Source: Prasinococcaceae sp. CCMP 1430
Taxonomy: Eukaryota > Plantae > Prasinodermophyta
Length of the DNA: 34,697 bases
Direction: 5' to 3'
Assembly: GCA_013416795.1 (NCBI GenBank)
Contig: RQSC01000016.1
Location: 244,740 to 279,436 of the forward strand
The notes under the pieces were generated by a model. It searched no databases, was not told the origin of the DNA, and was given only the letters and a program-made list of their open reading frames with translations. Shown here piece after piece: positions 9,748 through 25,751 of the stretch. Numbering within the stretch: the stretch's first letter is position 1; the number at the start of each line of letters is the position of its first letter. The position numbers and the translations under genes are program-made.

Positions 9748-10866
9748 GGCTGCAGCGGGCGAGAAGGCGAAGGGGTGTCGCGCGAGCGCCGCCGCGTCAG
9801 CAGGCTTGCATGCGTCGCGGGCCCTCGCTCAATCTACACGGCGTCCGCGGGTGGGGCGCGCATGCCGCGCTCGCGCAAGGGCTCGCGCGCGCGAGAGCGA
9901 GCGAGCGGCGGAGGCGGACGCAGCCACGAGCGTCCCGTCGACTGGAGCCTCGGGCAGCGAGCCGTGTCCGTCGTGAGGGGCGGAGGAGCAACGGCGTCCG
10001 CTGCGCGCCCGGCCGCGCCCCCTGCCGCGCACGCCGCCCGTCCACCCCTGCCCCAAAAAAACTAGGGCGGCGAGCGCGCGCGCGCGCGCGCGACGCGCGC
10101 GACGCGGCGCGCCGCACCTGAAGCGCGGGGGGGGGTCTCCTTTAATTCCCTGGGGAAGCCCTGCGAGTCTGTGCTCGGCAAGGCTGGAGTGGCACCCGCG
10201 CGCCGCAGGCGCGCCACCCCCCTGCGCGCGCGCGCCCGCCCCCTCCCCCCCACCCCCACCCCCCTGCGCCCCCTCCGGCCTTCCCCACGCCCCACGCGCG
10301 CGCGCGCGCCGCCGCCCGCCGCATGGCGTTTTACGTGGGGCCGATTCGCCCGCATCAAAACCCAAACCTCATCGCAAAACCACCATTTAGGATACATTTT
10401 CCAGTCTCTCAATAGGGTCCCTGTCAATCCCGTTTTGCACTGTTTCACACCGCAAAGCATTGAATACGTATGCGTGCCGCGCACGTGCGAATTGACCTCC
10501 GTTTTTTTTTTTTTTTTGCCGGGGCCGACTCCGACTGGGGGCGCTCGTCACCGCCCGTGGAGCGACGAGTGAGCGCGCGCATTTTTTTTTTGTAGGCTGC
10601 CGCTGCACACACACATTCTGTAATACATTACCGTCGTTTGTGACATTATAGTTTATATACATTCATAAATAACGGGGATGACCCATTTTATGGAGCGAAT
10701 CCGGCGCGTGCGCGCCAGCCGAGCAAAAAAAGCGGAGGAAAATGACGAAGAAAAGGGGGCAATGAAAAAAGGCCGCGCTCGGCAGGATCGCGCGCGCGCG
10801 CGGAGCCCAACTGAATTCGCCGCGGGTCCGACTTTCCGCCGCGCGGTTTCGCGCGGGCGCGGGCGG

Positions 10867-10877
10867 NNNNNNNNNNN
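10867..10877. other. Assembly gap (11 N) interrupting the 5' end of PPD4
   Basis: Run of N. Confidence 1.
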
Positions 10878-11619
10878 GCTGCTGCTCGGCGGGGGCGCGG
10901 TCGCCGCCGCAGCCGCGCTGGACCTGCGCGCGCCCGCGCCCGCGCACGCTGTCAATGGCACGGTGCAGGGGCGCATCCCCGGCGTCTCCGAGGAGGCCGA
11001 TGAGGAGGGCTTCCGCATGTACACGCGCCCCGAGGGTAAGGGCGGCGGCCACGGCGTTGGATGGTCCGAATTCCCGCCGTACCAGTTCCTGGTGCCGCCC
11101 GGCTGGGAGGAGCAGCCGGTGTCCATCGCCGACCCGGCGGGCACCGAGCTCGACCTCAAGTTCGCCTCCAAGGCCAAGAAAGGCGGCGGTGAGGCGGCCG
11201 TGCTCATCGAGCCAGTGCTGCGCTTCATGGACGTCGGCTTCAACGCCAACGTGGTGGTCACCGACGTCGGCCCCCCGCAGAAGCTCGTCGACGGCTTCGG
11301 CCCCGAGCTCATCGGCGGGCCCGTCGAGGAGTTCCAGCTCGCGCAGATGGACATCGTCACGCTGGACAACGGCCTGCCGGCGTACCGCTACGAGATCCTG
11401 CCGGCCTTCAACGGCGACCCGCACTGCTTCGTTACCATCACCGCCACGCGCAACAGGGTGTACATCCTCAACGTCAAGACGCCCGAGCCGCTGCTGCAGT
11501 TCCGCGAGCCCATGCTGCGCAAGATGGCCGAGTCGTTCAGCCCCGTCATCGCGCCCGAGGTCGAGGCGGCCCTCAAGGCCGGCACGGAGCTGCCGGCGGC
11601 CAACGTGGAGGAGGCGTAA
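10878..11619 (+). CDS. PPD4: PsbP domain-containing protein 4-like thylakoid lumen protein (5' partial)
   Basis: GRIPGVSE....GFRMYTRPEGKGGGHGVGWS..PYQFLVPPGWEEQPVSIADPAGTELDLKF matches the plant PPD4 pattern as I recall it. It is preceded by a hydrophobic signal ending in an AHA cleavage-like motif. The start is lost in the gap. Confidence 0.85.
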
Positions 11620-11737
11620 GCGCTCATGCGGCGACTAATAGGCACGGAGCCACAGCGAGCGCGGACGCGCAGCAGCGAGCGACGCTCGGCGCGTAAAGCA
11701 GTAGTGTACGACGGACCGCGCTCGTCGCGCGCGTGCA

Positions 11738-12400
11738 TTGGTCGTGTGCGCGTGCGCGGGGGCGCGGGCGTGTGTGCGCGGGCGTGTGCGAGTGCCTGCC
11801 TGTGCAAGCGTGCGTCTGCGCGTGTGTGCGGGGGCGCACGCGTGCGTGCGCGCGTGCGATGATACCGTCGAAATGAATGGACGCGTGCATTCGCGGCGTC
11901 GACGGCCTCCACCTGCGCCGACCCGTCGGCAGCCGCGCCACCTCGGCCCTCACGTCCCAATTCGGGGTGCAGGTGCTTCGCCTTCTTTTGTGATGGTCCG
12001 CGCACATTTGCGCCTCCCACACATTGCTAAGGCATGTAGACAAACATGACTGTCATATGCGAATGTGACGTGACATCTCATTGTCACATAGCCTGGTCTC
12101 AGAAAAGTCCTTTGCGCACACATGCATACAAAAAGAGACCGCACGCGCGCGCACACGCGCCCACGCCTGCACACTCGCACGCGCCTGGCCACGACGCGCA
12201 CGCCCGCGCCCACGCGCCCACGAGAGCATGCGCGTACGTCACAGCCCGCACGCGCACGGCGCACGCGCCTGGCCAGGCCGCACGCGCGTAACGCACACAC
12301 ATGCACCCGCACGTGCGCACGCGCAGCACACAACACAGAGCACACCCGCATCTGCCCGCGTCCCTGCCCGCTGCACACGCCCGCGCTCCGCGTCCGCCAC
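11738..12400. repeat. Low-complexity alternating purine-pyrimidine arms (GT-rich 11738-11860, CA-rich about 12138-12400) around a less GC-rich core
   Basis: Visible composition switch; no credible protein in any frame. Confidence 0.7.
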
Positions 12401-12770
12401 GCTGGCGGTCCCACCTCTTCGCCGGCGGCGGCGCGGCGCTGCCGCCCGCGTGCCGGAACGCATGCGCGCCCGCGCGCGCTGAACTCTCCCGTGGGTAGTA
12501 CTAGGCGCGCGTAAGAGCTGGCGCCGGCGCGCACCGCGCGCGCGCGCCCCGTCCAAACCCGAACCCCGCGCCGAATTTCACACCTCAAAAAGCATTCGCG
12601 AATCGCTTCATACAAACCCTGAACAGTGTGCCGGGCTGGCGCCGCGCGCGGCGCGCGAACGCGGGGTCCGGGGTCGGAAGAGGATCATGCGCGCGTGAGC
12701 ACGTGGTCGCGTGAACACACGCGTGTCAGGTTGGTTGGTTGTGTGGGTGGGGTGGCGTGGGGTGGAGTGG

Positions 12771-12819
12771 NNNNNNNNNNNNNNNNNNNNNNNNNNNNNN
12801 NNNNNNNNNNNNNNNNNNN
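12771..12819. other. Assembly gap (49 N) at the 5' end of putA
   Basis: Run of N. Confidence 1.
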
Positions 12820-15800
12820 GAAGCGCGCGCCGCGGACGCGCGCGCCGCGGGCGCGCGGCCGCTCCCGCCGCTCCCCGAGATGCCGGCCGAGGACGCCGTC
12901 AAGCGGCACGGAAAGCGCGTGCTCAACGCAGCGCGCGAGAAGCGCCGCGGGGAGCGCTGGACGGTGAGCAACTGGCTCACCAAACAGGCCGAGAGTGACC
13001 CCAAGTTCAAGGTGCCCCTCTTCCGCCTCGTCGATGTGCTCCCCAGGCTGCAGTCGAGCGCGTCGGTGCTGCAGCACACCAGGGAGTACATGTCCGAGCA
13101 GGGCGCCCCCGCGAAGCTCAAGTTCATGCTCGACGCGGCCAGCACGAGCGTGGCGCGCATGGCAGGCGCGGAGACCATTGTCAATAAGAGCGTCGTCATC
13201 CCCATCGAGGAGATGGGCAGGACCTTCATCGCCGGCCAGGACGCTACGACCGCCGCGCCCGCGCTGCGGAAGCTCTGGCAGTCGGGCGTGGGCTTCAGCG
13301 TCGACCTTCTTGGCGAGGCCGTCGTGCGCAAGGAGGAGGCGGACGCGTCCCTGTCGCAGTACGCCAGCCTCATCGACCAGCTGCCCGACCTTGCGGCAGG
13401 CTGGGCGCCCAACCTGACGCTCGAGAACGACCACCTGGGCATCGTGCCGCGCGCCAACGTGAGCGTGAAGCTATCCTCGATGCTCGAGACGCTCGACCCC
13501 GTGGCCACCGAGAAGTCCATCGCCGAGCTCAAGGCGCGCTTGCGACCGCTGCTCATCGAGGCCGGCAGGAAGGGCGTGCATGTCAACTTCGACATGGAGG
13601 AGCATAAATTGAAGGACCTCACGCTCCGCATCGTGCGCGAGCTGTGTGAGGAGGTGGACTTCTCCGCGGGCTACTCGCATCAGGCGTACCTCCGCTCCAC
13701 GGAGCGCGACGCGCAGGACATGATCGACTGGGCGCGCGCCAGCGGGCGCATCATCCAGGCGCGCCTCGTCAAGGGTGCCTACTGGGACCACGAGACCATC
13801 CACGCGGAGCAGATGGGGTGGCCTACGCCGGTGTGGAGCCGCAAGGTGGAGACCGACGCCGCCTGGGAGCGCACCGCGTGGCGCATGCTCACGCAGTATC
13901 CTCGCGAGCCCGGCGAGGGCGGCGTGACGCTCGCGCTGGGCACGCACAACGCGCGCTCGATCGGATTCGCGCTCGCGGCGCTCGAGCAGCTTGAGCTGAA
14001 GGAGAACGCCATCGAGGTGCAGAACCTGCGCGGCATGGCCGGCGGCATCCGCGACGCCTGCGCGGCGCTGGGGCTGCGCACGCGAGAGTACGTTCCCATC
14101 GGCCAGGTGGTTCCCGGCATGAGCTACCTCGTGCGCCGCCTGCTGGAGAACACCTCCAACCAGTCGTGGCTGCTGAACGCCGAAGGCGCGAACCGCGGCG
14201 CGGACGACTTGGCGCTCTTGGCGTCCCCGCACGCGGCCATCCCGGTCGCCAGTGAGTGCAGCCCTAGCCCGAATTCAGACCAGGCCATCTGGCACGAGCT
14301 CTCGGTGGCCGTCGAGGGTGTGGGCGATGGCAAGCCCTTCGTGAACGAGCCGTCGCGCGACTTCAGCGACGCCGCGCAGAGGGAGGGCCTAGCGGCGGCC
14401 ATCGAGCGCCGCTCGGCGCAGTTGCTGAAGGATGGTCCACCCGCGCCGGCTGAAGCGAGCGCGGCCGATGCCGACGACGCCGTCGCGCGCGCGGTCGCCG
14501 CGGCGGCGGCGTGGGCCGCCGTGTCGCCGAGGGAGCGTGCGGCGATCGCCGTGCGCGTGGCTGCGATCATACGCGAGCGTCGGGACGACGTGACGGCGTG
14601 CATCATGCACGACACCGGCAAGGGCTGGGCAGACGCCGATGCCGAAACGGCCGAGGGAATCGATTTCCCGGAGTACTACGCTCGCGAGGCCGTGCAGCTC
14701 TGCGAGCCGCAGTCGCTGGGCAAGTTCGTGGGGGAGGAAAACACGCTCCTCCACCGGCCGCGCGGCGTTGCGGTGGTCATCGCACCGTGGAATTTCCCCT
14801 TCGCCATCCTGTGCGGCATGACCGTCGCGGCGCTCGTCACGGGCAACCCTGTCATCATGAAGCCCGCCGAGCAGACGCCCGCCACCGCCGAGATGCTGCA
14901 CTCCATCCTGCTCGAGGCTGGCGCACCGCCCAGCTGCGTGCAGCTGCTGCACGGCCGGGGCGAGGTCGTGGGCGAGGCGCTCACCTCCAACACGGACGTG
15001 GCGACCATCCTCTTCACTGGCTCGAAGGATGTGGGGCTGCACATCGCTCAGAAGGTGGCGGCGGTGGACGAGGGACTGAAGCAGTGCCGCAAGGTCATCG
15101 CTGAGATGGGCGGCAAGAACGCCATCATCGTCGATGAGTCCGCCGACATGGACGAGGCCGTGCAGGGCGTGGTGCGCGCCGCTTTCGGCTTCCAAGGCCA
15201 AAAGTGCTCGGCGGCCTCGCGCGTGGTGGTGCACGAGGCCGTGTACGACGAGTTCCTGGAGCGCCTCGAGGGGGCCACGCGCGACCGTGTGGTGGGCGAC
15301 CCGCGCGATCCTGCGACCGACATCGGGCCCATGATCGACGCGGATGCGCGCGCCAAGAGCTTGGGCCATGTTGCCGACGCTATGGCAGCATGCCAGGCCT
15401 CAGGCCACGACGAGGCTGCCGAAAACGGCGCCAGGCTCGTCTTCGCGGGCGTGGCGCCCACGCCGGGCGCCGAACTCATGCCCGGGAGGCACTACGTGCC
15501 CCCGCACATCTTCGCCGTCAACGGGGACTCTCCAGTTGACCTGTGGCGCTCGGAGGTCTTTGGTCCCGTGCTCGCCGTCGCCAAGGCGCGCGAAATCGAC
15601 CACGCCATCGATCTGGCCAATGACTCGGACTACAAGCTGACGGGCGCGCTGTACTCGCGGACGCCGAGCCACATCGAGGCGGTGCGCAAGAAATTCAAGG
15701 TCGGCAACCTGTACATCAACCGTGATCCCACGGGAGCCTTGGTGGGCAGGCAGCCTTTCGGGGGAGGAGGTATGAGTGGGGTGGGGCCGGAGAAGGCCGG

Positions 15801-15891
15801 CGGCAAGAATTATCTGCCGGCGCTCGTTGAGCCGTATGTAGTCTGCGAGAACACGCAGCGTAGGGGGTTCGCGCCCGGGATGGTCCAGTGA
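12820..15891 (+). CDS. putA: Bifunctional proline dehydrogenase / P5C (GSA) dehydrogenase, bacterial PutA type (5' partial, no intron in the visible part)
   Basis: PRODH motifs SVDLLGE, NVSVKLS, FDMEE, RLVKGAYWD, LGTHN and YLVRRLLENTSN are fused to ALDH motifs IAPWNFP, KPAEQTP, FTGS, EMGGKN, GQKCSAASR (catalytic Cys), EVFGPVL and QPFGG in one open frame of about 3 kb. Confidence 0.96.
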   Translation, partial: EARAADARAAGARPLPPLPEMPAEDAVKRHGKRVLNAAREKRRGERWTVSNWLTKQAESDPKFKVPLFRLVDVLPRLQSSASVLQHTREYMSEQGAPAKLKFMLDAASTSVARMAGAETIVNKSVVIPIEEMGRTFIAGQDATTAAPALRKLWQSGVGFSVDLLGEAVVRKEEADASLSQYASLIDQLPDLAAGWAPNLTLENDHLGIVPRANVSVKLSSMLETLDPVATEKSIAELKARLRPLLIEAGRKGVHVNFDMEEHKLKDLTLRIVRELCEEVDFSAGYSHQAYLRSTERDAQDMIDWARASGRIIQARLVKGAYWDHETIHAEQMGWPTPVWSRKVETDAAWERTAWRMLTQYPREPGEGGVTLALGTHNARSIGFALAALEQLELKENAIEVQNLRGMAGGIRDACAALGLRTREYVPIGQVVPGMSYLVRRLLENTSNQSWLLNAEGANRGADDLALLASPHAAIPVASECSPSPNSDQAIWHELSVAVEGVGDGKPFVNEPSRDFSDAAQREGLAAAIERRSAQLLKDGPPAPAEASAADADDAVARAVAAAAAWAAVSPRERAAIAVRVAAIIRERRDDVTACIMHDTGKGWADADAETAEGIDFPEYYAREAVQLCEPQSLGKFVGEENTLLHRPRGVAVVIAPWNFPFAILCGMTVAALVTGNPVIMKPAEQTPATAEMLHSILLEAGAPPSCVQLLHGRGEVVGEALTSNTDVATILFTGSKDVGLHIAQKVAAVDEGLKQCRKVIAEMGGKNAIIVDESADMDEAVQGVVRAAFGFQGQKCSAASRVVVHEAVYDEFLERLEGATRDRVVGDPRDPATDIGPMIDADARAKSLGHVADAMAACQASGHDEAAENGARLVFAGVAPTPGAELMPGRHYVPPHIFAVNGDSPVDLWRSEVFGPVLAVAKAREIDHAIDLANDSDYKLTGALYSRTPSHIEAVRKKFKVGNLYINRDPTGALVGRQPFGGGGMSGVGPEKAGGKNYLPALVEPYVVCENTQRRGFAPGMVQ

Positions 15892-16557
15892 GCTCGCAGC
15901 TGGGACACGACAGTATGCTGCACCGTGGTTGATTGCGCCTGCGCAGTGGAGCGCCTTCAGAACATGCACGACCAGGGGCATATCTGCACTTGAAATTTCA
16001 TGCATTAGATGCATGCGACATTATATTTGAATGTAAGTTTGTCTTTGGAGAGTCACAGACGAGGCGTCGGTGGCGAGGGGGTCGAGCGCGCCGCGCGCCG
16101 CCGCCTCGGCCCTTCCCCCCACCCCCTCCGGCCACGTCCCCGCGATGGCGGCAGGCCTCGCCCCCGCCGGCAGGCCCGTCGCGGGCCTCGGCCGGCAACG
16201 ACCAGAGCATTCACGCACTGTACCTCTTCGTGCGCGCTTGCGTTTTGATGGGGGTTTGGCGGCATCCGAAGTGACATGGCTCGGACCTCCGCCCATTCGC
16301 GCGCCGCCCGCGAATCGCCGCGAGCGTTTACGTGTACGCAACGCAAATTCGCGCGCGCGAATTGACCGGTCGATGGCGGTGCGCGCCGCCGCGCGCGCGC
16401 GCGGCCGTTTTTTTTTTTTTTGCGAGGGGGGGCTGTTTCTGTTTCTGCTCCGCGACCTCCGACCGACCGACCGAAGTGATGCGAGAAATGATCCGACCGG
16501 CGGGTTTCTTTCGGCAGGTTGGGTCGCGGCTTTCTTTTTTTTGGGTTTGTTTGTGCA

Positions 16558-16585
16558 CTGTCTGTCTGTCTGTCTGTCTGTCTGT
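16558..16585. repeat. (CTGT)7 microsatellite upstream of the RING gene
   Basis: Direct count. Confidence 0.95.
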
Positions 16586-16707
16586 GTTCGCCGTCTGCGC
16601 CGCGCGCATTTGCGCGAGCCCCCGGAAGCTGCGGCGCCGCGCGCCACAGACAGCGCGCGCGCTGCGCGGCGCGCGTCGGCGGCGCGGCGGAGGCGCGCGG
16701 CGCGGCG

Positions 16708-18375
16708 ATGGCGGCGCCGTACTTCTGCTTCGTGTGCAATGCGGAGGTTGCCGTTGCAGACCCCGCCGCCGCGCTGCGCTGCCCGAGGTGCGGCGGCGAG
16801 TTCCTCGAGGAGCTGCCGCAAGCAGGGGGTGGCAGCGGCGATGCGGGCGCAGACGCCGCCCGGGCCGCCGGTGCCGCGGGCGGCGAGGGCGGTGTGGCTG
16901 GCGGGCCTTACGACGACCCTCGCGAGTTCATGCGCCGTCCACAGCAGAACAGGGCAGCTGACAGCTTCGGATTCGGCTTCGGGCCGGCCCGCGACGCCGC
17001 GGACACGGGCCCCGCGTTCGTGCATCCGTTCCAGCTCTTCGCTGGAGACCCGATGAGAGACTTTGGCCGTTACGGCGGCGCTGCCGCCGCGGGGGTTCCA
17101 GGGGGGCGGGCAGCTGCCGATGGCGGGCCGCACAACGACGCGCGGGGCGCACCGCAGCAGCCGCTCGATGGGGCCGCCGGGTTGGAGCAGGTGTTCGCCG
17201 ACCTGAGGGGAATGCTGGCTCAAGCGCGGACGCGTCTGCGCGAGGCGGAGCGAGAGTCGGAGCGGGGGCGTGCGGGCAGGGGCGAGCGAGCCGCCGCCGC
17301 CAACGCGATGCCTGAAGAGGGGCGCACGGGGGCGTCCGTCGACGCGGATGCGCATGGCTCGCTCCCTGGCAGCAGGGGCGCGCGTGGCGCGCAGCAGCAG
17401 AGCGCGCAGGCGGGGAGAGGCCGGCGGCCGGCGGGTGATCCCCGACTCGACCCGCTCCTGCAGATGATGGGGCAGTTGTTCGGAATACACGTGCATGTGG
17501 AGGGGGTCGATGCCGCTCCGATGGCTGGCAACCTCGGAGATTACTACACGGGCAGCCTGGACCGTCTGGCAGAGCAGCTCGCCGAGCAGTTCCCTGCGAG
17601 CGCGGCCGGCCCGCCACCTGCTTCCAAGGACGCTGTAGCTGCTCTGAAGAGCGTGACGGTGGATGCTGCGAGGGTGGCGGCCGGCGAGATGTGCTACGTG
17701 TGCCAGGAGGCATACACCGAGGGCGAGGTGGACGTGCTTGAGATGCCGTGCGGCCACCTGTTCCACAGCGCGTGCCTGAAGCCGTGGTTGGAGATACACA
17801 ACAATTGCCCAGTGTGCCGGCACGAGCTACCTACGGACGACGCCGATTACGAGAGGCAGCGCGCGGCCAGGTCGACGGGGGGGCGACGGCAGGGGGACGC
17901 TTCGAGCGACGCTGCCGCAGGGGCTGCCGCGGCCAGCGCCACCCCCGGAAGCGCCGCCGAGCAGTCGGCGGAGCGCGCCCGTGAGCAGGAGGCCGAGCGC
18001 GCCTCTGAGCGGGCGGCCGAGCGGGCCGCTCGCGGGGCGCCTGGCTCCCTCGCAGCGGCGCTGGCGGGGGCGATTGGTCGCGCGTTCGGGCAAGGCGTGG
18101 ACGCCAGCGACGGCGGCGGGGACGCCGCCAGGCGCGGCGCGGAGCGCGCCGTCGCTGAGGCCGCAGGCCGCGTCGCCGACACGGTCGCGGACTCGGTCGC
18201 CGATGCCATCGCGGACTCGTTCGACGGCGCGTTCGCCGGAGGCGATAGCCCCACGCCCGTCGATCGCACGGCCGAGCGCGCGATCTTCGACGCCAGCGAC
18301 GCCATCGCCGCCGCCGCGGATGCCGTCGCGGACGCCGTCGACGCCCTGGACAGCGACGCCGACGCCGTCGCATGA
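16708..18375 (+). CDS. RING-H2 E3 ubiquitin ligase, RNF115/RNF126 type
   Basis: N-terminal zinc ribbon YFCFVC...CPRCGGEFLEEL, then GPPPASKDAVAAL, then RING-H2 CYVC..MPCGHLFHSACLKPWLEIHNNCPVCR, and an Ala/Asp-rich tail. Confidence 0.93.
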   Translation: MAAPYFCFVCNAEVAVADPAAALRCPRCGGEFLEELPQAGGGSGDAGADAARAAGAAGGEGGVAGGPYDDPREFMRRPQQNRAADSFGFGFGPARDAADTGPAFVHPFQLFAGDPMRDFGRYGGAAAAGVPGGRAAADGGPHNDARGAPQQPLDGAAGLEQVFADLRGMLAQARTRLREAERESERGRAGRGERAAAANAMPEEGRTGASVDADAHGSLPGSRGARGAQQQSAQAGRGRRPAGDPRLDPLLQMMGQLFGIHVHVEGVDAAPMAGNLGDYYTGSLDRLAEQLAEQFPASAAGPPPASKDAVAALKSVTVDAARVAAGEMCYVCQEAYTEGEVDVLEMPCGHLFHSACLKPWLEIHNNCPVCRHELPTDDADYERQRAARSTGGRRQGDASSDAAAGAAAASATPGSAAEQSAERAREQEAERASERAAERAARGAPGSLAAALAGAIGRAFGQGVDASDGGGDAARRGAERAVAEAAGRVADTVADSVADAIADSFDGAFAGGDSPTPVDRTAERAIFDASDAIAAAADAVADAVDALDSDADAVA

Positions 18376-18413
18376 CCTCCCCTCCCCGTACGCTCGGGCC
18401 GCGCACGCGCGTT

Positions 18414-18967
18414 CGATTTTGTAGACCCTACATGTAACCTAAATTGCTTCGAGGACGAACCTGAATCCCAATGACCGGAAGCTCTCGCATGGATGGAACC
18501 GTGTGGCGCTCAACCCAGGCAGGAGACGTTGAGTTGTTAGCGCCCCACCAACCATCCGACGCCACCGACCGACCGAACCGAACCGAATACCCCCGAACTG
18601 AGAACGGGATCGATGCGCGGGGCTCGCCGTGCGAACCCTCGACGCTCGGACCACTCCCCGGGAGTCACCCGGGTCTGCACGGGACTCGCGCCGGACGCGG
18701 GCGCCGAGGGGCGATGGTGCGCTCGCGCGGGCGTCCGGCGCACATGGGGTCTACTCCTATGAGGGTCTACACGAATCGTTCGTGGAGTGCATTTTGATCA
18801 TGAGACTCCATGCGTTTTTGGGAGCGATGCGTTTAGGTTGTGTCGCGTCGCCTTCGGGCGTCCGTCCGGCGTACATGGGGTGTACGCCTGCAAGGGTCTA
18901 CAAGAATCGTTCATGCAGTGCGTTTTGATGTGTTTTTTGTGGGGGATGCGTTTGGGTTTCGGCGCGG
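18414..18967. repeat. Non-coding element with an inverted repeat and a diverged 131-bp-period tandem duplication
   Basis: Copies start at 18732 and 18863 and align by eye. CGATTTTGTAGACCCT (18414-18429) is the near reverse complement of AGGGTCTACAAGAATCG (18893-18909). Confidence 0.8.
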
Positions 18968-19186
18968 CGCGCGCGATCGCCGCCGGGCACACTTTTGGAA
19001 CGCCGGGCGCGGCGGGTGCGATACCGCCTCTTCCCGCGGGCCGGGGGCGTGGGGGGCAGGTGTGGGTGCGTTTGATGTAGTTTTGTAATGCTTTGACCCG
19101 CGGGCGGATCGGCGCGCGGTCGCGGCGCCCTTATGCGCTTATTATGCGCGCGCTCGTCGCGCTCCCGGCGGGCGCGCCACACAGCG

Positions 19187-19378
19187 CGCGCGCCGCTTCG
19201 CCAGCTGCCACTTCGTCACGTTGTGCACTACGTCGATCATCAGCGGGCGGCCCCACACACGTTTGTCGAGCGCCGCACTGCCCACGACTTCGCCGTGCCA
19301 GTTGTGAACCGGGTGCGCACCCACGCGCTCCATGCGCTTTGAGCGCTCGCGTGGGTGCTTAGTCAGCGCGCGCTCGTC
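19187..19378 (-). pseudogene. Fragment of mitochondrial ribosomal protein uL4m
   Basis: HPVHNWHGEVVG...VWGRPLMIDVVHNVTKWQLAKRR matches the organellar L4 motif D(I/V)(I/V)HxVVxWQLAKR. The expected GTxxTK continuation is absent. The fragment is bounded by the N at 19380 and a (GC)n tract at 19184-19192. Confidence 0.75.
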
Positions 19379-19827
19379 CNCGCGCCGCGCCGTGCCCGCG
19401 GTTGACCGGCGCGATTTCGCGGCGCGCCGTTATTTCGCGCGGCGACTCCGCGCAATGTGCGACTGACATCGGCCGGCCTTCGCGCGCAGGCTCCCACGCG
19501 ACGCGCGCGAGCACGCGCGGCGCCCCTCCCCCCTACCTCCCGCGCGTCCCCGCGGCGCGGGCGACCCTCCGCCCCCGACCTCGCCCCCAGGAGCGCGAGG
19601 CGGGCGCCGCGCCGCCCCCCCCCTCCAATCCCCTGCCGGACCGACGCAGCCCCGCGCGCGCGGCACGCGCGAGGCTCTTTTTCTTTCCTTTTCTTGCGCG
19701 GCGCCGCTCGCGGGCGGCACGCCCGCGCGCGCCGTCCCTTAGAAGGGGGAGAGGGAGCCAGTTCCCGTCGACGCTCGCGAGCGAGTGCCCTCGCGGCGCC
19801 TCGCGCGCGACACCCCAACCAGCGGCC

Positions 19828-21956: not shown

Positions 21957-24083
21957 TCACTTGAACTTGCGCGAGCGCACGGTGTTGGTCTTGATGCCCG
22001 TGCCCTCCCCACCGTAGCCCGCGCCACCGCCGCCTGCGGCGGAGGGCCCACGGCCCGACATGCGCACGGAAGCCTTGCGGAACTTCTCGCGCGCCATCGC
22101 GCGCGGGTTGCGGGCGAGCTTCTTGCGGTGGGGCGTGAGGCCTTTGTTCTTGGCCATGGTGCGCGTGAGCGCGCGGCGGCCGCCCTCCTCCGCGAAGGCC
22201 TCATCCTTCGAGTCCAGCGCGTACTGCTGGGCGCGCAGGTTGGCGGTGTCGTACGCGTCCGCGCGGTCCGCCTTGCGCTTGCGCGCAGCGCCCGCGGCCC
22301 TGGCATACGTCTCCACGTCGTCCATGTCCGGAATGTACGTGCCGGGCATCCCGTCATCGCCATCGTCGCCGTGCGACACCGGCGGTCTAGAGCGGTCCAT
22401 CTGCGAGCGGCGCTCGCCGAGCGACGGGCGGTTGACCCCCGCGTCGGCGTCGCCAGACTTGGCGGACGCGCGCGCGCTCGCGGCCACCGCGCGCGCGCGC
22501 GCGCCCGCGGCCGCCACGGCGTCGCTGAGCCTGCGGCGCTTGCCGTCGGCGCGCATGGCATCCATGTCCTCGGCCATGCCTGCGACGGTGTCGCCGAGCG
22601 CGCCGCTCCCCAGGTCGGCAAACTCCGACAGCGCCGACCGCATCCTCCCCTGCCTCTCGCCGGCCGCCCTGGCCAGCCTCTCCTTCTTGGTGAGGTTGTG
22701 GCGCACAAAGAGCTCCTCCTCTGCCGCAGCGCGCCGCTCCGCGCGCCGCCGCTCGCGCAGCGCCCACCCGCGGTCCTCGCGCTCGGCGAGCTCCTCGGGC
22801 CCGTCGCCGACGTGGCCCACCACGTCGCGCAGCTCCTCGTTGCGACCAGTGCGGCGCCCGCGGCGCCCGCGCCGTTCCCCGCGCTCGTCCTCGTCCTCGT
22901 CCAGACCCTCGCCTGCCATCGACATCGCGCGCATCTTCGGCGGGCGGTACACGTCATCACCCTCACCGCCCCCGCCAGCAAGCGCGTCCGCGTCACCGTC
23001 CAGCAGGCGTTCGAGCCCGCTTGCGCCCCTGCCACCCGCGCGCCCGTCACCCATGCGGTCGGGGCGCGGCGCCAGCAGCGCGTCGTCGTCTTCGACGCCC
23101 GCGTCCTCCCCGTCATCGCCGCCGCCCGCCGCCAGCTGGGCCGCGCCCGCCGCCAGCAGCTTGTCGACCAGATACTGCAGCTTGCGGTCGATGGGGCGCG
23201 CCTTCTCGAGGTACAGCCTGAGTTTCACGAGGCGCTCAACGACGGGGTGTCTGCGCACGGACTTGCCCTCGGCGCGGAGCAGCACGTAGAAGGCGATGTT
23301 GGAGCAGTACGACAGCAGCAGCATGTGCTTCGCCTCGAGGTACGAAAGCCCCTCCGCAGTGGCGTACTCGCCCGCGCGCACGGCCGCGAGCAGCGGCTCG
23401 GCCTTTGAGCGCACCTCCTCGAGGCACGTGCGCAGCTCCTCCAGCAGCGCGGCGAGCTCGGGCGCCGCGTCGGCCACGCGCGCGGCCCGCGCTTCCGCGG
23501 CCTCGGCGTCCTCGTCGAAGTCGTCATCCTCGTCGCCCTCGCCACCGTCCTCGTCACCGCTGTCGTCAAAGTCGGCGTCGTCGAGCTCCTCGAGCTCAGC
23601 CTTCTGCAGGCGACGCGCCTCGGCTGCCTCCTCGCCGAGCGCCTCCTCGTCCTCCTCGTCCGCCGCGGCGTCGGCGCCATAGTACGCGCCGCCCCGCGCG
23701 CCCCAGCCGTCGCGCCCATCCCCCTCGTCCCCCTCGTCCTCCTCGCCCTCCTCATCGACGCCCGCGCCTCGCAGCGAGCCGCGCATCGCTTTCTGCTGGC
23801 GCCTCAGCGCCGCGATGGTCTCGTCGTCGCCGTCGCCGTCGCTGCCGTCGTCCTCGTAGTCCTCGCCATCCTCGTCCTCTTCCTCCTCTTCCTCCTCGTC
23901 GTCGTCCTCGCTGCCAGCGCCGAGCGCGTCGACGCCGTCCTCGTCCTCGTCCTCGTAGTCGTCGCTCCCTTCGTCGTCCGAGGAGCCGCCGCCCTCCAGC
24001 GCGACGCTCGCGTCGCGGCCGCGCGCGCGCGCGGCGTAGAAGCGGTCCACCTCGTCGCCGCGCGCTGCCTCACGCAGCGCGGC
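21957..24083 (-). CDS. SAS10: SAS10/UTP3 small-subunit processome component (5' partial)
   Basis: Acidic N-terminus, a Sas10/C1D-like region GLSYLEAKHMLLLSYC...HPVVERLVKLR.YLEK.RPIDRKLQY, and a C-terminal Sas10 domain KNKGLTPHRKK..RNPR...GYGGE.TGIK. The frame is open up to the gap. Confidence 0.93.
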   Translation of the reverse strand, partial: AALREAARGDEVDRFYAARARGRDASVALEGGGSSDDEGSDDYEDEDEDGVDALGAGSEDDDEEEEEEEDEDGEDYEDDGSDGDGDDETIAALRRQQKAMRGSLRGAGVDEEGEEDEGDEGDGRDGWGARGGAYYGADAAADEEDEEALGEEAAEARRLQKAELEELDDADFDDSGDEDGGEGDEDDDFDEDAEAAEARAARVADAAPELAALLEELRTCLEEVRSKAEPLLAAVRAGEYATAEGLSYLEAKHMLLLSYCSNIAFYVLLRAEGKSVRRHPVVERLVKLRLYLEKARPIDRKLQYLVDKLLAAGAAQLAAGGGDDGEDAGVEDDDALLAPRPDRMGDGRAGGRGASGLERLLDGDADALAGGGGEGDDVYRPPKMRAMSMAGEGLDEDEDERGERRGRRGRRTGRNEELRDVVGHVGDGPEELAEREDRGWALRERRRAERRAAAEEELFVRHNLTKKERLARAAGERQGRMRSALSEFADLGSGALGDTVAGMAEDMDAMRADGKRRRLSDAVAAAGARARAVAASARASAKSGDADAGVNRPSLGERRSQMDRSRPPVSHGDDGDDGMPGTYIPDMDDVETYARAAGAARKRKADRADAYDTANLRAQQYALDSKDEAFAEEGGRRALTRTMAKNKGLTPHRKKLARNPRAMAREKFRKASVRMSGRGPSAAGGGGAGYGGEGTGIKTNTVRSRKFK

Positions 24084-24590
24084 NNNNNNNNNNNNNNNNN
24101 NNNNNNNNNNNNNNNNNNNNNNNNNNNNNNNNNNNNNNNNNNNNNNNNNNNNNNNNNNNNNNNNNNNNNNNNNNNNNNNNNNNNNNNNNNNNNNNNNNNN
24201 NNNNNNNNNNNNNNNNNNNNNNNNNNNNNNNNNNNNNNNNNNNNNNNNNNNNNNNNNNNNNNNNNNNNNNNNNNNNNNNNNNNNNNNNNNNNNNNNNNNN
24301 NNNNNNNNNNNNNNNNNNNNNNNNNNNNNNNNNNNNNNNNNNNNNNNNNNNNNNNNNNNNNNNNNNNNNNNNNNNNNNNNNNNNNNNNNNNNNNNNNNNN
24401 NNNNNNNNNNNNNNNNNNNNNNNNNNNNNNNNNNNNNNNNNNNNNNNNNNNNNNNNNNNNNNNNNNNNNNNNNNNNNNNNNNNNNNNNNNNNNNNNNNNN
24501 NNNNNNNNNNNNNNNNNNNNNNNNNNNNNNNNNNNNNNNNNNNNNNNNNNNNNNNNNNNNNNNNNNNNNNNNNNNNNNNNNNNNNNNNNN
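24084..24590. other. Assembly gap (507 N), probably holding the starts and shared promoter of SAS10 and the Tudor-UBA gene
   Basis: Run of N flanked by divergent open frames. Confidence 1.
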
Positions 24591-24608
24591 GGCGGCGCCG
24601 GGCGCGAG

Positions 24609-25751
24609 ATGCCTCGGCCGACGCCGGCGCGCGCCGCGTCGGAGTCGGCGTCGTCGGCGTGGAACTTAAAGGAAAAGAGGGGAAGGCTCAAGCGCGAGTG
24701 CTCCCGGGTCGCCGCGTTGCGCGACGCGCACGCCGACAGCCCGCGGAGCATGCCGCTCAAGAAGCGACGGAAAAGGCCCGCTGCGGGGGGAGGGGGGCGA
24801 CCCAAGACCAATGGATCCTGCGAGCCGCAGCTGCTACCGCCGCTCGGTGGGCACATCAAGGTATACTGGGACGGTGAGAGTGCGTGGTACGAGGGCATCG
24901 TCGTGGAAATCAAAGAGAGCTCTGACCCCAGCACGAGCACATACACCGTCTTCTACCCTGTTGACGAGGTGACGACTGAGCATGCGCCCACTGAGCTCTG
25001 GCAGCTCGATCGCAATCGAGACTCCGTGCAAGGGGCGAACGGCAAGCGTCTGATAGGGACATCTCCAGCGCCGGTTCCCTCGTCGGCGCCCGCTGTCGAG
25101 GAGACCGATGTCAACGATGAGATCCCACCAATGGCGGAGCCCGCGCCCGAGGCTCCGGCAGCTGTCAAGGTGCACGGGAAAAGAGGTGGCCGAAAGCCAC
25201 GGGTGCGGTCACCGAAGGCCAAGCAAGCACGCCCCGTGGAGCCTGCGCCCGCTGAGCAAGCGTTGGGGCGACGACCTTCGAGGAGGAAACTTCCTGCGCC
25301 GACACCATCGGCCCCGCCGCCGCCCGGCCGCGGCCGATCACGGAAGGGCGCGCGCGCGCAAGCGGAGGAGCCTGCAGAGCCTGCCCCCCCCCTGCCGCCG
25401 CTGCCGCACGTTGGCACCACCGTGCGCGTTCACTGGGCCGGCGATGGCGAGTGGTACACCGGCAACGTTGTGTCTGCGGACCATAGCACCGCGCAATACC
25501 TGGTGCACTACCCTGAAGACGACATGACCGTCGCGCACGACGCCAGCGAGCCATGGGAGGTCCTCGCCGACGGCGCGCGGCGCGAGCATGTGCACATTCG
25601 CCCCCCGAACATGAGCGAGCTGCCTGCGGGCCCGCTAGGCCATCTCATGCAGCTCGGATTCGAGAGGGGAGCCGCACAGCAGGCCCTTGACCTTCACCAG
25701 GGCGACGCGGTCGCAGCCATCGACACGCTCTTTGCCTCGGCGCCCAGGTAG
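24609..25751 (+). CDS. Protein with two Tudor/Agenet-like domains and a C-terminal UBA-like domain (possibly 5' partial)
   Basis: GGHIKVYWDGESAWYEGIV..YTVFYPVDE, VGTTVRVHWAGDGEWYTGNV..YLVHYPEDD and LMQLGFERGAAQQAL..HQGDAVAAIDTLF. Confidence 0.8.
   Translation: MPRPTPARAASESASSAWNLKEKRGRLKRECSRVAALRDAHADSPRSMPLKKRRKRPAAGGGGRPKTNGSCEPQLLPPLGGHIKVYWDGESAWYEGIVVEIKESSDPSTSTYTVFYPVDEVTTEHAPTELWQLDRNRDSVQGANGKRLIGTSPAPVPSSAPAVEETDVNDEIPPMAEPAPEAPAAVKVHGKRGGRKPRVRSPKAKQARPVEPAPAEQALGRRPSRRKLPAPTPSAPPPPGRGRSRKGARAQAEEPAEPAPPLPPLPHVGTTVRVHWAGDGEWYTGNVVSADHSTAQYLVHYPEDDMTVAHDASEPWEVLADGARREHVHIRPPNMSELPAGPLGHLMQLGFERGAAQQALDLHQGDAVAAIDTLFASAPR

What the first reader, a model, noticed from the sequence alone, without database searches (positions are those of the whole stretch)
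12820..15891. Bacterial-type fused PutA in an algal nuclear gene neighbourhood (HGT candidate)
Seen: complete PRODH and P5CDH catalytic motifs in one visible 3-kb frame without introns. It has an Ala/Arg-rich N-terminal extension running into a gap, host-like G/C-ending codons and a TGTAA at 16032. Its 3' side is contiguous with a eukaryotic RING gene. Known: plants, fungi and animals use separate ProDH and P5CDH genes, while the fused substrate-channelling PutA is typical of bacteria. The N-terminal FKVPLFRLVDVLP...HTREY pattern and the lack of a ribbon-helix-helix domain recall minimal Geobacter-type PutAs (from memory). Inference: a horizontally acquired, probably organelle-targeted channelling enzyme, relevant to proline as osmolyte or nitrogen source.
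Basis: partly seen in the sequence, partly recalled or inferred. Interest (0 to 1): 0.82.

Follow-up and report, generated by a model that had tools for sequence, protein, structure and literature searches.

The report
Bacterial fused PutA in green alga
A marine green picoalga (Prasinoderma coloniale) carries and transcribes, in its nuclear genome, a complete bacterial-type fused enzyme that turns proline into glutamate; the gene came from marine Phycisphaerae bacteria, and this is an unusual but not revolutionary case of gene transfer, because eukaryotes normally use two separate enzymes for this pathway.

Summary
Window 12880-15891 (+) is an intact 1003-codon ORF with PutA_N, Pro_dh and Aldedh domains. 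It is colinear over its full length with the minimalist PutAs of Bdellovibrio (5ur2) and Geobacter (4nm9), and it has no RHH domain and no extra C-terminal domain.

It is not a contaminant:
- It lies in one gap-free stretch (12820-19379) with a eukaryotic RING gene.
- Its DNA depth equals that of its flanks.
- At least 14 runs from more than 10 studies hold it.
- It gives a discrete, unspliced transcript that ends 19 nt after TGTAA.

A neighbouring gene's product carries the EukProt label PRCOL, which points to Prasinoderma coloniale.

A 68%-identical orthologue occurs in an uncultured marine relative. There the gene has a 664-nt GT..AG intron inside the PutA_N region and a 53-residue Arg/Ala/Ser-rich N-terminal presequence. 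The end of that presequence aligns with the window's in-frame stretch that runs into the gap.

A careful ML tree nests the two algal genes inside marine Phycisphaerae PutAs (support 100/99 and 100/98). An AU test rejects the alternative (p 0.00045).

Best reading: a single old transfer from Planctomycetota, now a working, probably mitochondrion-targeted channelling enzyme. Still open are the true 5' end, which is hidden in the gap, the compartment, and whether the genome keeps separate ProDH and P5CDH genes.

The parts
12771..12819 (.). Assembly gap (49 N) that hides the 5' end of the gene. The real gap is longer than 49 nt.
   Evidence: N run seen. DNA contig X1 record 3 continues 512 nt upstream of 12820 without matching window 12258-12770. 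RNA depth just left of the gap is about 3, against about 180 in the gene.
12820..12879 (+). Twenty in-frame codons upstream of the annotated ATG (EARAADARAAGARPLPPLPE). This is probably the tail of an N-terminal targeting presequence; the alternative is 5' UTR.
   Evidence: The frame is open back to the gap. BLASTP aligns the window's PLPPLPE-MPAEDAV with the relative's PSSQLPPLPAEESV, at the end of the relative's 53-aa extension. The RNA contig covers the stretch from 12820.
12880..15891 (+). PutA coding sequence as publicly modelled (1003 codons plus TGA). It is intronless here.
   Evidence: Own protein P0001 is 100% identical. Pfam domains. RNA contig colinear with no joints. AlphaFold model pLDDT 79.8, TM 0.83-0.86 to 5ur2/4nm9.
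12889..13227 (+). PutA_N helical arm domain (PF18083), which contains the FKVPLFRLVDVLP motif.
   Evidence: residues 24-136 of the 12820-based translation, E 1.2e-15. The relative's intron interrupts the orthologous K-T-Q|L-F-R site. The window has no intron there.
13261..14169 (+). Proline dehydrogenase (FAD, beta8-alpha8 barrel) domain.
   Evidence: PF01619, E 2.6e-74. VSVKLSS, FDMEE, LVKGAY and YLVRRLLEN lie on invariant columns (K197, D238, K298, R419, R420, E423).
14449..15819 (+). P5C / L-glutamate-gamma-semialdehyde dehydrogenase (ALDH) domain.
   Evidence: PF00171, E 2.8e-122. N638 (WNFP), E742 (EMGGKN) and C776 (GQKCSA) are invariant.
15892..16055 (+). 3' UTR with TGTAA at 16032-16036. 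The transcript contig ends at about 16055.
   Evidence: The neighbouring PsbP-like transcript shows an A11 tail at 11712, 16 nt after CGTAA, which is the same spacing logic.
16519..18375 (+). Downstream eukaryotic RING-H2 / zinc-ribbon gene. It is not part of PutA; it is the linkage evidence for a nuclear location.
   Evidence: Pfam zf-RING_2 and Zn_ribbon_19. No N between 12820 and 19379. Logan contigs from PutA and from the RING gene both run into the (CTGT)n repeat at 16530-16593: 55 + 39 - 64 = 30 letters of overlap, which would equal k-1 if Logan used k = 31 (not checked here).

Best explanation
This is a nuclear gene of the green picoalga Prasinoderma coloniale (Prasinodermophyta). It encodes a complete minimalist (Geobacter/Bdellovibrio-type, branch 2, no RHH, no C-terminal domain) proline utilization A enzyme.

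An ancestor of P. coloniale and of at least one uncultured marine relative acquired the gene once from a marine Phycisphaerae-like planctomycete. The gene was then domesticated: it has host-like codon usage, a eukaryotic 3' end after TGTAA and an N-terminal presequence, and in the relative it has gained a spliceosomal intron.

Inferred mechanism, by homology with solved PutAs:
1. The FAD-dependent PRODH barrel oxidises L-proline to P5C and passes the electrons to a membrane quinone.
2. P5C / glutamate semialdehyde travels through an internal tunnel to the NAD+-dependent ALDH site.
3. That site makes L-glutamate.

The most likely location is the mitochondrion, which has the quinone pool and is the canonical site of eukaryotic proline catabolism. 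There the enzyme would let the cell use proline as a nitrogen, carbon or energy source, or clear proline that had accumulated as an osmolyte.

Shown here: gene integrity, nuclear linkage, transcription, the orthologue with intron and presequence, and the phylogenetic nesting. Inferred: enzyme activity, channelling, compartment and physiological role.
For: - Architecture and conserved motifs.
- Full-length homology to 5ur2 (E 3.7e-199, residues 42-982) and 4nm9. Predicted fold TM 0.83-0.86 to both.
- Organism and eukaryotic context: the own Sas10 protein is labelled PRCOL_00003416-RA in EukProt. MADS-box, Sas10/Utp3, S28 peptidase, RING and PsbP-like genes share the window.
- Not a contaminant: it sits in one N-free stretch with the RING gene. 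DNA contig depth is 413.6 against 368/399/456 in the flanks (X8), and 32.5 against 38.9/43.8/33.2 (X1). Fourteen DNA-type runs hold it at a word share of about 1.0.
- Transcription: a 3238-nt RNA contig covers 12820-16055 with no joints. RNA depth is zero in both intergenic spacers. The transcript ends 19 nt after TGTAA.
- Orthologue: P0002/P0327 is 68-69% identical. Transcript L001 compared with Tara genomic contigs L083-L086 shows a 664-nt GT..AG intron. The orthologue has an obligatory upstream ATG and a 53-aa R/A/S-rich extension whose end aligns with the window's upstream frame. Its contig also holds an intron-split HisIE gene.
- Phylogeny: in the quick LG+G4 tree of 98 rows and the careful LG+C20 PMSF tree of 51 rows, the algal pair has 100/100 support, is sister to a Phycisphaerae MAG group (100/99) and then to a Phycisphaerales group (100/98), all inside a 100/100 Phycisphaerae-dominated clade. 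Zero of 200 bootstrap trees and the AU test (p 0.00045) allow a bacteria-only clade.
- The sister bacteria sit on 90-107 kb marine Tara contigs with bacterial neighbours.
- Constraint: dN/dS is 0.34 between the two algal copies.
- All named hits in the whole-length and ProDH-half searches are Planctomycetota. ESM Atlas clusters are 100% Bacteria.
Against: - The 5' end lies in an assembly gap, and the RNA contig stops at exactly 12820. A start at ATG 12880 with no presequence cannot be excluded.
- No targeting predictor or localisation data were available.
- No poly(A) tail was seen directly on the PutA transcript, only on its neighbour.
- Codon usage does not discriminate, because the Phycisphaerae relatives are equally GC-rich (GC3 0.91-0.94).
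- The group used in the AU test was defined after the tree had been seen.
- The relative's taxonomic identity is inferred, not shown.
- Activity and channelling are untested.
- The long algal stem (0.97 substitutions per site) could slightly distort its exact sister position within the Phycisphaerae.
Confidence: 0.88

Rival explanations
1. The PutA stretch is DNA of a culture-associated planctomycete, a common algal associate, that was mis-joined to an algal scaffold.
For: The nearest homologues are Phycisphaerae. The gene is intronless in the window. An N gap sits at its 5' side. Donor-like GC content means composition cannot exclude this.
Against: - There is no N between the gene and the RING gene.
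- Independent Logan contigs run from PutA 640 nt past its stop into the RING gene's 5' region.
- Depth equals that of the flanking algal contigs in two runs.
- The stretch is present in all strain and sample runs listed.
- Identity to any bacterium is only 53%.
- The transcript ends after the algal TGTAA signal, with silent spacers on both sides.
- The orthologue carries a spliceosomal intron.
Confidence: 0.02
2. The enzyme is nuclear and functional but is not mitochondrial. Either translation starts at ATG 12880 and the protein stays in the cytosol, or the presequence is a chloroplast transit peptide and the enzyme feeds plastid glutamate and plastoquinone.
For: ATG 12880 is what the public model uses, and it matches the bacterial N-terminus. 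The RNA contig ends at 12820. Green-algal chloroplast and mitochondrial presequences have similar composition (general knowledge), and the extension is Ala/Arg/Ser-rich.
Against: - The relative has no Met at the equivalent position, so it must use the upstream ATG, which gives a 53-aa extension.
- The window's upstream frame is open and aligns with the end of that extension.
- The break at 12820 coincides with a low-complexity GC-rich stretch where DNA contigs also break (12841 in X8). That points to an assembly cause rather than a transcription start.
- PRODH needs a respiratory-type quinone acceptor, and eukaryotic proline catabolism is mitochondrial (established knowledge).
Confidence: 0.3
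3. The fused gene is an old, vertically inherited eukaryotic or green-lineage gene, or the transfer went from alga to bacteria, rather than a transfer from bacteria into Prasinodermophyta.
For: Two algal species share it with a long common stem. Public eukaryotic sampling is thin, and the search tools list only the best 120-150 hits.
Against: - The algal pair is nested three nodes deep inside a large bacterial radiation. That radiation itself sits among Myxococcota, Bdellovibrionota, Verrucomicrobiota and other Planctomycetota PutAs.
- A bacteria-only clade is rejected.
- No other eukaryote-labelled sequence appeared.
- Eukaryotes otherwise use separate ProDH and P5CDH genes (established knowledge; reviews found).
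Confidence: 0.03
4. The gene is a decaying relic with no function.
For: None directly. The stem branch is long.
Against: - The 1003-codon frame is intact in two species that have diverged to 69% identity.
- It retains every column that is invariant across the 21 aligned PutAs, including the conserved catalytic motifs.
- dN/dS is 0.34.
- RNA depth is comparable to that of its neighbours (180.8 against 210 and 114).
- It is present in seawater metatranscriptomes.
Confidence: 0.03

Closest known systems
Minimalist (type A, branch 2) PutA of Bdellovibrio bacteriovorus (PDB 5ur2) and Geobacter sulfurreducens (PDB 4nm9)
   Same: It has the same domain order (N-terminal arm, PRODH barrel, linker, ALDH domain) and about the same length. 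It is colinear over residues 36-1000, with E 3.7e-199 and 3.9e-185. All conserved motifs known as catalytic are kept. The predicted fold has TM 0.83-0.86.
   Different: - Identity is only 35-37% in the structural alignment.
- It is encoded in a eukaryotic nucleus.
- It has extra N-terminal presequence-like residues.
- It has Ala-rich inserts in the inter-domain linker and near residues 835-850.
- In the orthologue the gene is interrupted by an intron.
PutA of marine Phycisphaerae / Phycisphaerales MAGs (P0005, P0012, P0003; then P0013-P0015)
   Same: These are the closest sequences (52-53% identity over 98% of the length) and the sister group in all trees. They share the marine planktonic habitat (Tara contigs).
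   Different: They sit on bacterial contigs of 90-107 kb with bacterial neighbours. The closest group is 997-999 aa long, and nothing suggests an N-terminal extension or an intron in them. The algal genes sit on a long stem (0.97 substitutions per site).
Eukaryotic monofunctional ProDH (PRODH/POX) and P5CDH (ALDH4A1 / plant ALDH12)
   Same: They carry out the same two reactions, and the inferred compartment is the same (mitochondrion).
   Different: In other eukaryotes these are two separate genes and proteins with no fixed tunnel. The window's protein is a single chain and groups with bacterial PutAs, not with eukaryotic enzymes.
Trifunctional PutA of Escherichia coli and other Pseudomonadota (RHH plus C-terminal ALDH-superfamily domain)
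   Same: The PRODH and P5CDH catalytic cores are shared.
   Different: There is no ribbon-helix-helix DNA-binding domain, no Pro_dh-DNA_bdg (PF14850) hit and no C-terminal extra domain. The relationship is much more distant (E about 1e-100).

Membership tests
Bifunctional proline utilization A (PutA), minimalist type | PRODH flavoenzyme barrel domain with the conserved proline/FAD-binding motifs | tested here: met
   PF01619, E 2.6e-74. K197, D238, K298, Y404, R419, R420 and E423 lie on columns invariant in 21 PutAs. The residue roles come from published PutA structures (my own knowledge).
Bifunctional proline utilization A (PutA), minimalist type | ALDH-superfamily P5CDH/GSALDH domain with catalytic Cys, general-base Glu and oxyanion Asn | tested here: met
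   PF00171, E 2.8e-122. C776 (GQKCSA), E742 (EMGGKN) and N638 (WNFP) are invariant.
Bifunctional proline utilization A (PutA), minimalist type | Both domains in one polypeptide, with the PutA N-terminal arm, colinear with solved PutAs | tested here: met
   PF18083, E 1.2e-15. A single HMMER stretch covers 36-1000 of the query against 42-982 of 5ur2. AF2 model TM 0.83-0.86 to 5ur2/4nm9 whole chains.
Bifunctional proline utilization A (PutA), minimalist type | Buried tunnel that channels P5C/GSAL between the two active sites, and coupled proline-to-glutamate activity | not testable with these tools
   Inferred only from homology and the overall fold. It needs enzyme kinetics or a structure.
Trifunctional / long PutA (RHH repressor, C-terminal ALDHSF domain) | N-terminal ribbon-helix-helix DNA-binding domain and/or C-terminal extra domain | tested here: not met
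   There is no RHH or PF14850 hit. The protein ends where the 5ur2/4nm9 chains end. The algal N-terminal extension is a low-complexity R/A/S stretch, not an RHH.
Bacterium-to-eukaryote horizontally transferred nuclear gene | Nested with support inside a bacterial clade, with no closer eukaryotic homologues | tested here: met
   (100/99 and 100/98). AU p 0.00045. No eukaryote-labelled hits other than its own lineage.
Bacterium-to-eukaryote horizontally transferred nuclear gene | Physical linkage to bona fide eukaryotic genes, and read depth equal to the host genome | tested here: met
   The stretch 12820-19379, which includes the RING gene, has no N. Contig depths match the flanks in runs X8 and X1. 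The upstream join across the gap was not verified.
Bacterium-to-eukaryote horizontally transferred nuclear gene | Eukaryotic gene features: spliceosomal intron, polyadenylated transcript, targeting extension | tested here: inconclusive
   In the window itself there is no intron and the 5' end is in the gap. The transcript ends 19 nt after TGTAA, but no A-tail was read. In the 68%-identical orthologue, a GT..AG intron and a 53-aa presequence are shown.
Bacterium-to-eukaryote horizontally transferred nuclear gene | Shared by more than one host species (fixed, not a recent insertion) | tested here: met
   The orthologue cluster P0002/P0327/P0320 occurs in Tara metagenomes and a JGI transcript contig. 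The contig is eukaryotic, with an intron-split HisIE. Its taxon was not identified.

The most novel reading that the evidence does not exclude
Prasinodermophyta may have replaced the canonical two-enzyme mitochondrial proline catabolic pathway with a single planctomycete-derived, presequence-bearing PutA. That would make this the first documented eukaryotic organelle that runs a substrate-channelling PutA, and a natural experiment on whether channelling of P5C/GSAL matters in a eukaryotic cell. The transfer would predate the split of at least two prasinodermophyte lineages.
Probability: 0.3. Interest if true: 0.65.

Novelty: new member of a known kind. Interest (0 to 1): 0.55.

Why it matters
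Reviews of proline catabolism treat fused PutA as a bacterial enzyme and separate ProDH and P5CDH as the eukaryotic solution. Here a bona fide PutA is fixed, expressed and under constraint in a nuclear genome. In the sister species it has an intron and a presequence. This gives enzymologists a eukaryotic PutA to test for channelling, quinone coupling and membrane association in an organelle.

It also gives evolutionary biologists a clean, datable transfer from Planctomycetota into a green alga, in the deepest-branching phylum of green plants. Donor and recipient share the oligotrophic ocean habitat, which fits the genome paper's suggestion that bacterial gene transfer aided adaptation. Ecologically, it points to use of dissolved proline by a picoalga.

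It is nevertheless one more metabolic gene transfer into an alga, not a new kind of system.

Tried and rejected
- Literature: seven full-text searches and three papers read found no description of a fused PutA in Prasinoderma or any alga.
  - The OtV5 paper concerns a monofunctional host-like ProDH.
  - The 'PutA' in Nosenko & Bhattacharya 2007 is the COG name for generic aldehyde dehydrogenases, not the fused enzyme.
  - The P. coloniale genome paper mentions neither proline nor this gene.
- The metagenome-contig scan with the single protein returned only one 48% bacterial locus.
- AFDB cluster search returned PutA-like folds, but organisms were masked, so it gave no information on other eukaryotes.
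- A tblastx synteny comparison of the relative's contigs with the window was swamped by GC-rich low-complexity matches and was dropped.
- Codon usage as evidence of amelioration was rejected as non-discriminating, because donor-clade genes have the same GC3.
- The long hits P0179 and P0220 were checked as possible eukaryotic fusions. Both have bacterial-looking gene neighbourhoods, and P0179 comes from a MAG assembly.
- The two earlier-findings look-ups returned nothing on this gene.


Full report
**Observation.**
The window is about 70% GC throughout. One frame is open from 12739 to 15891 (+) and is interrupted only by 49 N at 12771-12819. Translated from 12820, it carries PutA_N (PF18083, E 1.2e-15), Pro_dh (PF01619, 2.6e-74) and Aldedh (PF00171, 2.8e-122) in that order. 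It has no RHH or Pro_dh-DNA_bdg domain. The public model of this gene (own protein P0001) starts at ATG 12880 and is 1003 aa long. In an alignment of 21 PutAs, the window's protein keeps every invariant column. These include K197, D238, K298, R419/R420/E423 (YLVRRLLEN), N638 (WNFP), E742 (EMGGKN) and C776 (GQKCSA). No N lies between 12820 and 19379.

**What kind of PutA.**
The best solved relatives are the minimalist PutAs of Bdellovibrio bacteriovorus (5ur2, E 3.7e-199, one stretch covering 36-1000 of the query and 42-982 of the chain) and Geobacter sulfurreducens (4nm9, 3.9e-185). Rhizobial, Bradyrhizobium and longer PutAs score around 1e-100. An AlphaFold model built on the 21-sequence alignment (pLDDT 79.8, pTM 0.82) superposes on whole chains of 5ur2 and 4nm9 with TM 0.83-0.86.

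**Whose genome.**
The window also encodes a PsbP-like protein, a MADS-box protein, Sas10/Utp3, a pseudouridine synthase, a histidine phosphatase and an S28 serine carboxypeptidase. The window's own Sas10 protein is labelled PRCOL_00003416-RA in EukProt, and its next named relatives are green algae. This points to Prasinoderma coloniale. Its published genome paper (PMC7455551) describes a 25.3-Mb picoplanktonic green alga of a separate phylum. It invokes bacterial gene transfer in general terms but mentions neither proline nor this gene.

**Contaminant or nuclear gene.**
Fourteen DNA-type runs of two coded organism labels, from more than ten studies, hold the 3.7-kb stretch at a word share of 0.99-1.00. 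Four RNA-type runs hold 0.59-0.87 of it, and two seawater metatranscriptomes hold parts. I laid two RNA and two DNA runs on 11400-17300, with these results:

- A 3238-nt RNA contig (depth 180.8) covers 12820-16055 with no joints, so the visible gene is unspliced.
- RNA depth is zero across 11794-12384 and 16128-16324. The RNA signal is therefore not DNA carry-over, and PutA is a discrete transcription unit between the PsbP-like gene (depth 210) and the RING gene (depth 114).
- The transcript contig ends 19 nt after TGTAA. The neighbouring PsbP-like transcript shows an A11 tail at 11712, 16 nt after CGTAA, so the library does carry poly(A) tails. No tail was read on PutA itself.
- DNA contig depth for PutA equals the flanks: 413.6 against 368, 399 and 456 in X8, and 32.5 against 38.9, 43.8 and 33.2 in X1.
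- DNA contigs run from PutA 640 nt past its stop to 16529 and on into the (CTGT)n repeat at 16530-16593. The contig carrying the RING gene enters the same repeat from the other side. The overlap of 55 + 39 - 64 = 30 letters would equal k-1 if Logan assembled with k = 31 (not checked here).

Together with only 53% identity to any bacterium, this excludes a contaminant.

**The 5' end.**
The 20 codons between the gap and ATG 12880 are open. Whether they are coding cannot be settled from the window. The RNA contig stops at 12820, but DNA contigs also break near there (12841 in X8), in a low-complexity GC-rich stretch. One DNA contig continues 512 nt further upstream without matching the window's left side. 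The gap is therefore much longer than 49 nt and hides the true 5' end.

**An orthologue that settles the eukaryotic status.**
The only sequence closer than the bacteria is cluster P0002 (68-69% identity). For comparison, the window's Sas10 has a 69%-identical relative in similar data sets.

- Its transcript-like contig L001 (3605 nt, a single gene with an AT-richer 3' tail) has an in-frame ATG 53 codons upstream of the bacterial-type start. Other members of the cluster are called at 1056 aa with that extension (P0327/P0328).
- The relative has no Met at the position of the window's M1, so it must use the upstream ATG.
- The extension (MSSMARRRGASAALEAAA...) has 7 Arg, 15 Ala, 10 Ser and 3 acidic residues in 55, which is the composition of an organellar presequence.
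- Its end (PSSQLPPLPAEESV) aligns with the window's PLPPLPEMPAEDAV.
- In five Tara Oceans metagenome contigs the same gene is genomic. Compared with L001, four of them (L083-L086) contain a 664-nt insertion bounded by CAG|GTGCGC...ACATACAG|CTC. This is a canonical GT..AG intron between the codons K-T-Q and L-F-R of the PutA_N domain. The fifth contig (L087) starts inside the intron and shows only the acceptor site.
- The same contig holds a HisIE gene split by an intron.

The window has no intron at that site. The gene family is therefore fixed in at least two eukaryotic species, and it has acquired an intron in one of them and an N-terminal extension.

**Origin.**
Eighty PutA loci from GTDB species genomes were fetched with their taxonomy, and the nearest metagenomic proteins were added.

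- A 98-row LG+G4 tree and a 51-row tree under LG+C20+F+G4 (PMSF), both quick and careful, agree.
- The two algal proteins are sisters (100/100) on a long stem (0.97).
- Their sister is a group of Phycisphaerae MAG proteins (P0005, P0012, P0003, P0009; 100/99).
- Next comes a Phycisphaerales group (P0013-15; 100/98).
- All of these lie within a 100/100 clade made up of Phycisphaerae and unclassified Planctomycetota, apart from two MAG rows filed under Planctomycetia families (L009, L061). Myxococcota, Bdellovibrionota, Verrucomicrobiota, Thermodesulfobacteriota and other Planctomycetota PutAs fall outside.
- None of 200 bootstrap trees makes the bacterial members a clade without the algae. The AU test rejects that constraint (delta lnL 38.2, p 0.00045). 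The caveat is that the group was named after the tree had been seen.
- The 50%-identity representative library puts the window's protein in the same cluster as a Phycisphaerae-type sequence (52%), with the next representatives at 45% or less.
- A search with the ProDH half alone, done as the operators advised, found only Planctomycetota-labelled fragments. ESM Atlas neighbours are all bacterial.
- The sister bacterial gene lies on 90-107 kb marine (Tara) contigs among bacterial genes such as GuaA and DnaX. Donor lineage and recipient thus share the open-ocean habitat.

**Constraint and composition.**
GC3 is 0.895, against 0.81-0.96 in the neighbours, and the RSCU correlation with them is 0.98. 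Phycisphaerae PutA genes have GC3 of 0.91-0.94 and RSCU correlations of 0.86-0.92 with the window's PutA (one lower-GC Phycisphaerales MAG gives 0.57), so composition says little either way. dN/dS between the two algal copies is 0.34 (pS 0.46). This is probably an overestimate, given the strong codon bias.

**Mechanism.**
By homology with solved PutAs (established knowledge of the family), the FAD-dependent PRODH barrel oxidises proline to P5C and reduces a membrane quinone. The intermediate then moves through a buried tunnel to the NAD+-dependent GSALDH site, which yields glutamate. I consider a mitochondrial location most likely (about 0.55-0.6). The reasons are the presequence-like extension, the need for a respiratory quinone, and the fact that eukaryotic proline catabolism is mitochondrial. 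Plastid or cytosolic locations remain open. A role in using dissolved proline as a nitrogen, carbon or energy source, or in clearing osmolyte proline, is inference.

**Comparison and novelty.**
As an enzyme, this is an ordinary member of the minimalist PutA family, and every defining feature that can be tested from sequence is met. What is unusual is the host. I found no paper describing a fused PutA in any alga or other eukaryote. The library is incomplete, however, and the gene model itself is already public. I therefore rate it as a new member of a known kind, with moderate interest.

**Not done.**
I could not check whether the genome keeps separate ProDH and P5CDH genes, because only this window was available. 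I could not close the gap, run a targeting predictor, or identify the Tara relative taxonomically.

Noticed in passing
L088:2001-8888 (MAG GCA_964506845.1, protein P0179): A 2295-aa bacterial ORF joins a glutamate dehydrogenase domain (ELFV_dehydrog) to a complete PutA (PutA_N, Pro_dh, Aldedh). It would be a possible three-step proline-to-2-oxoglutarate polypeptide.
   Followed up: partly
L089:2001-11882 (Logan SRR22386049 contig, protein P0220): A 3293-aa bacterial protein carries a PutA module in its C-terminal third, behind about 2000 residues with no Pfam assignment. DsbD and peroxiredoxin genes are its neighbours.
   Followed up: no
L083:5142-6280 (minus strand): On the relative's Tara contig, the HisIE gene (PRA-CH/PRA-PH) is split between ...EGKATFW and SRSRQSLWTKGE..., which implies an intron. 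This is independent evidence that the contig is eukaryotic.
   Followed up: partly
window 16530-16593: A (CTGT)n microsatellite lies in the 5' region of the RING gene. All Logan contigs break here, and the reads tool skipped it as a repeat.
   Followed up: partly
window 10678-11712: The PsbP-like gene (PF01789, with an 11-N gap inside it at 10867-10877) has a poly(A) addition site at 11712, 16 nt after CGTAA. This suggests a TGTAA-like polyadenylation signal with variants in this genome.
   Followed up: partly
window 24084-24590: A 507-N assembly gap explains the apparent drop in GC (0.34) in the 24001-25000 composition bin. It is not a real compositional island.
   Followed up: yes
window 13193: There is a single T>G difference in one RNA-type run (X16, whole contig depth) but not in the other three runs. 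It is probably a strain polymorphism inside the PutA coding sequence.
   Followed up: no
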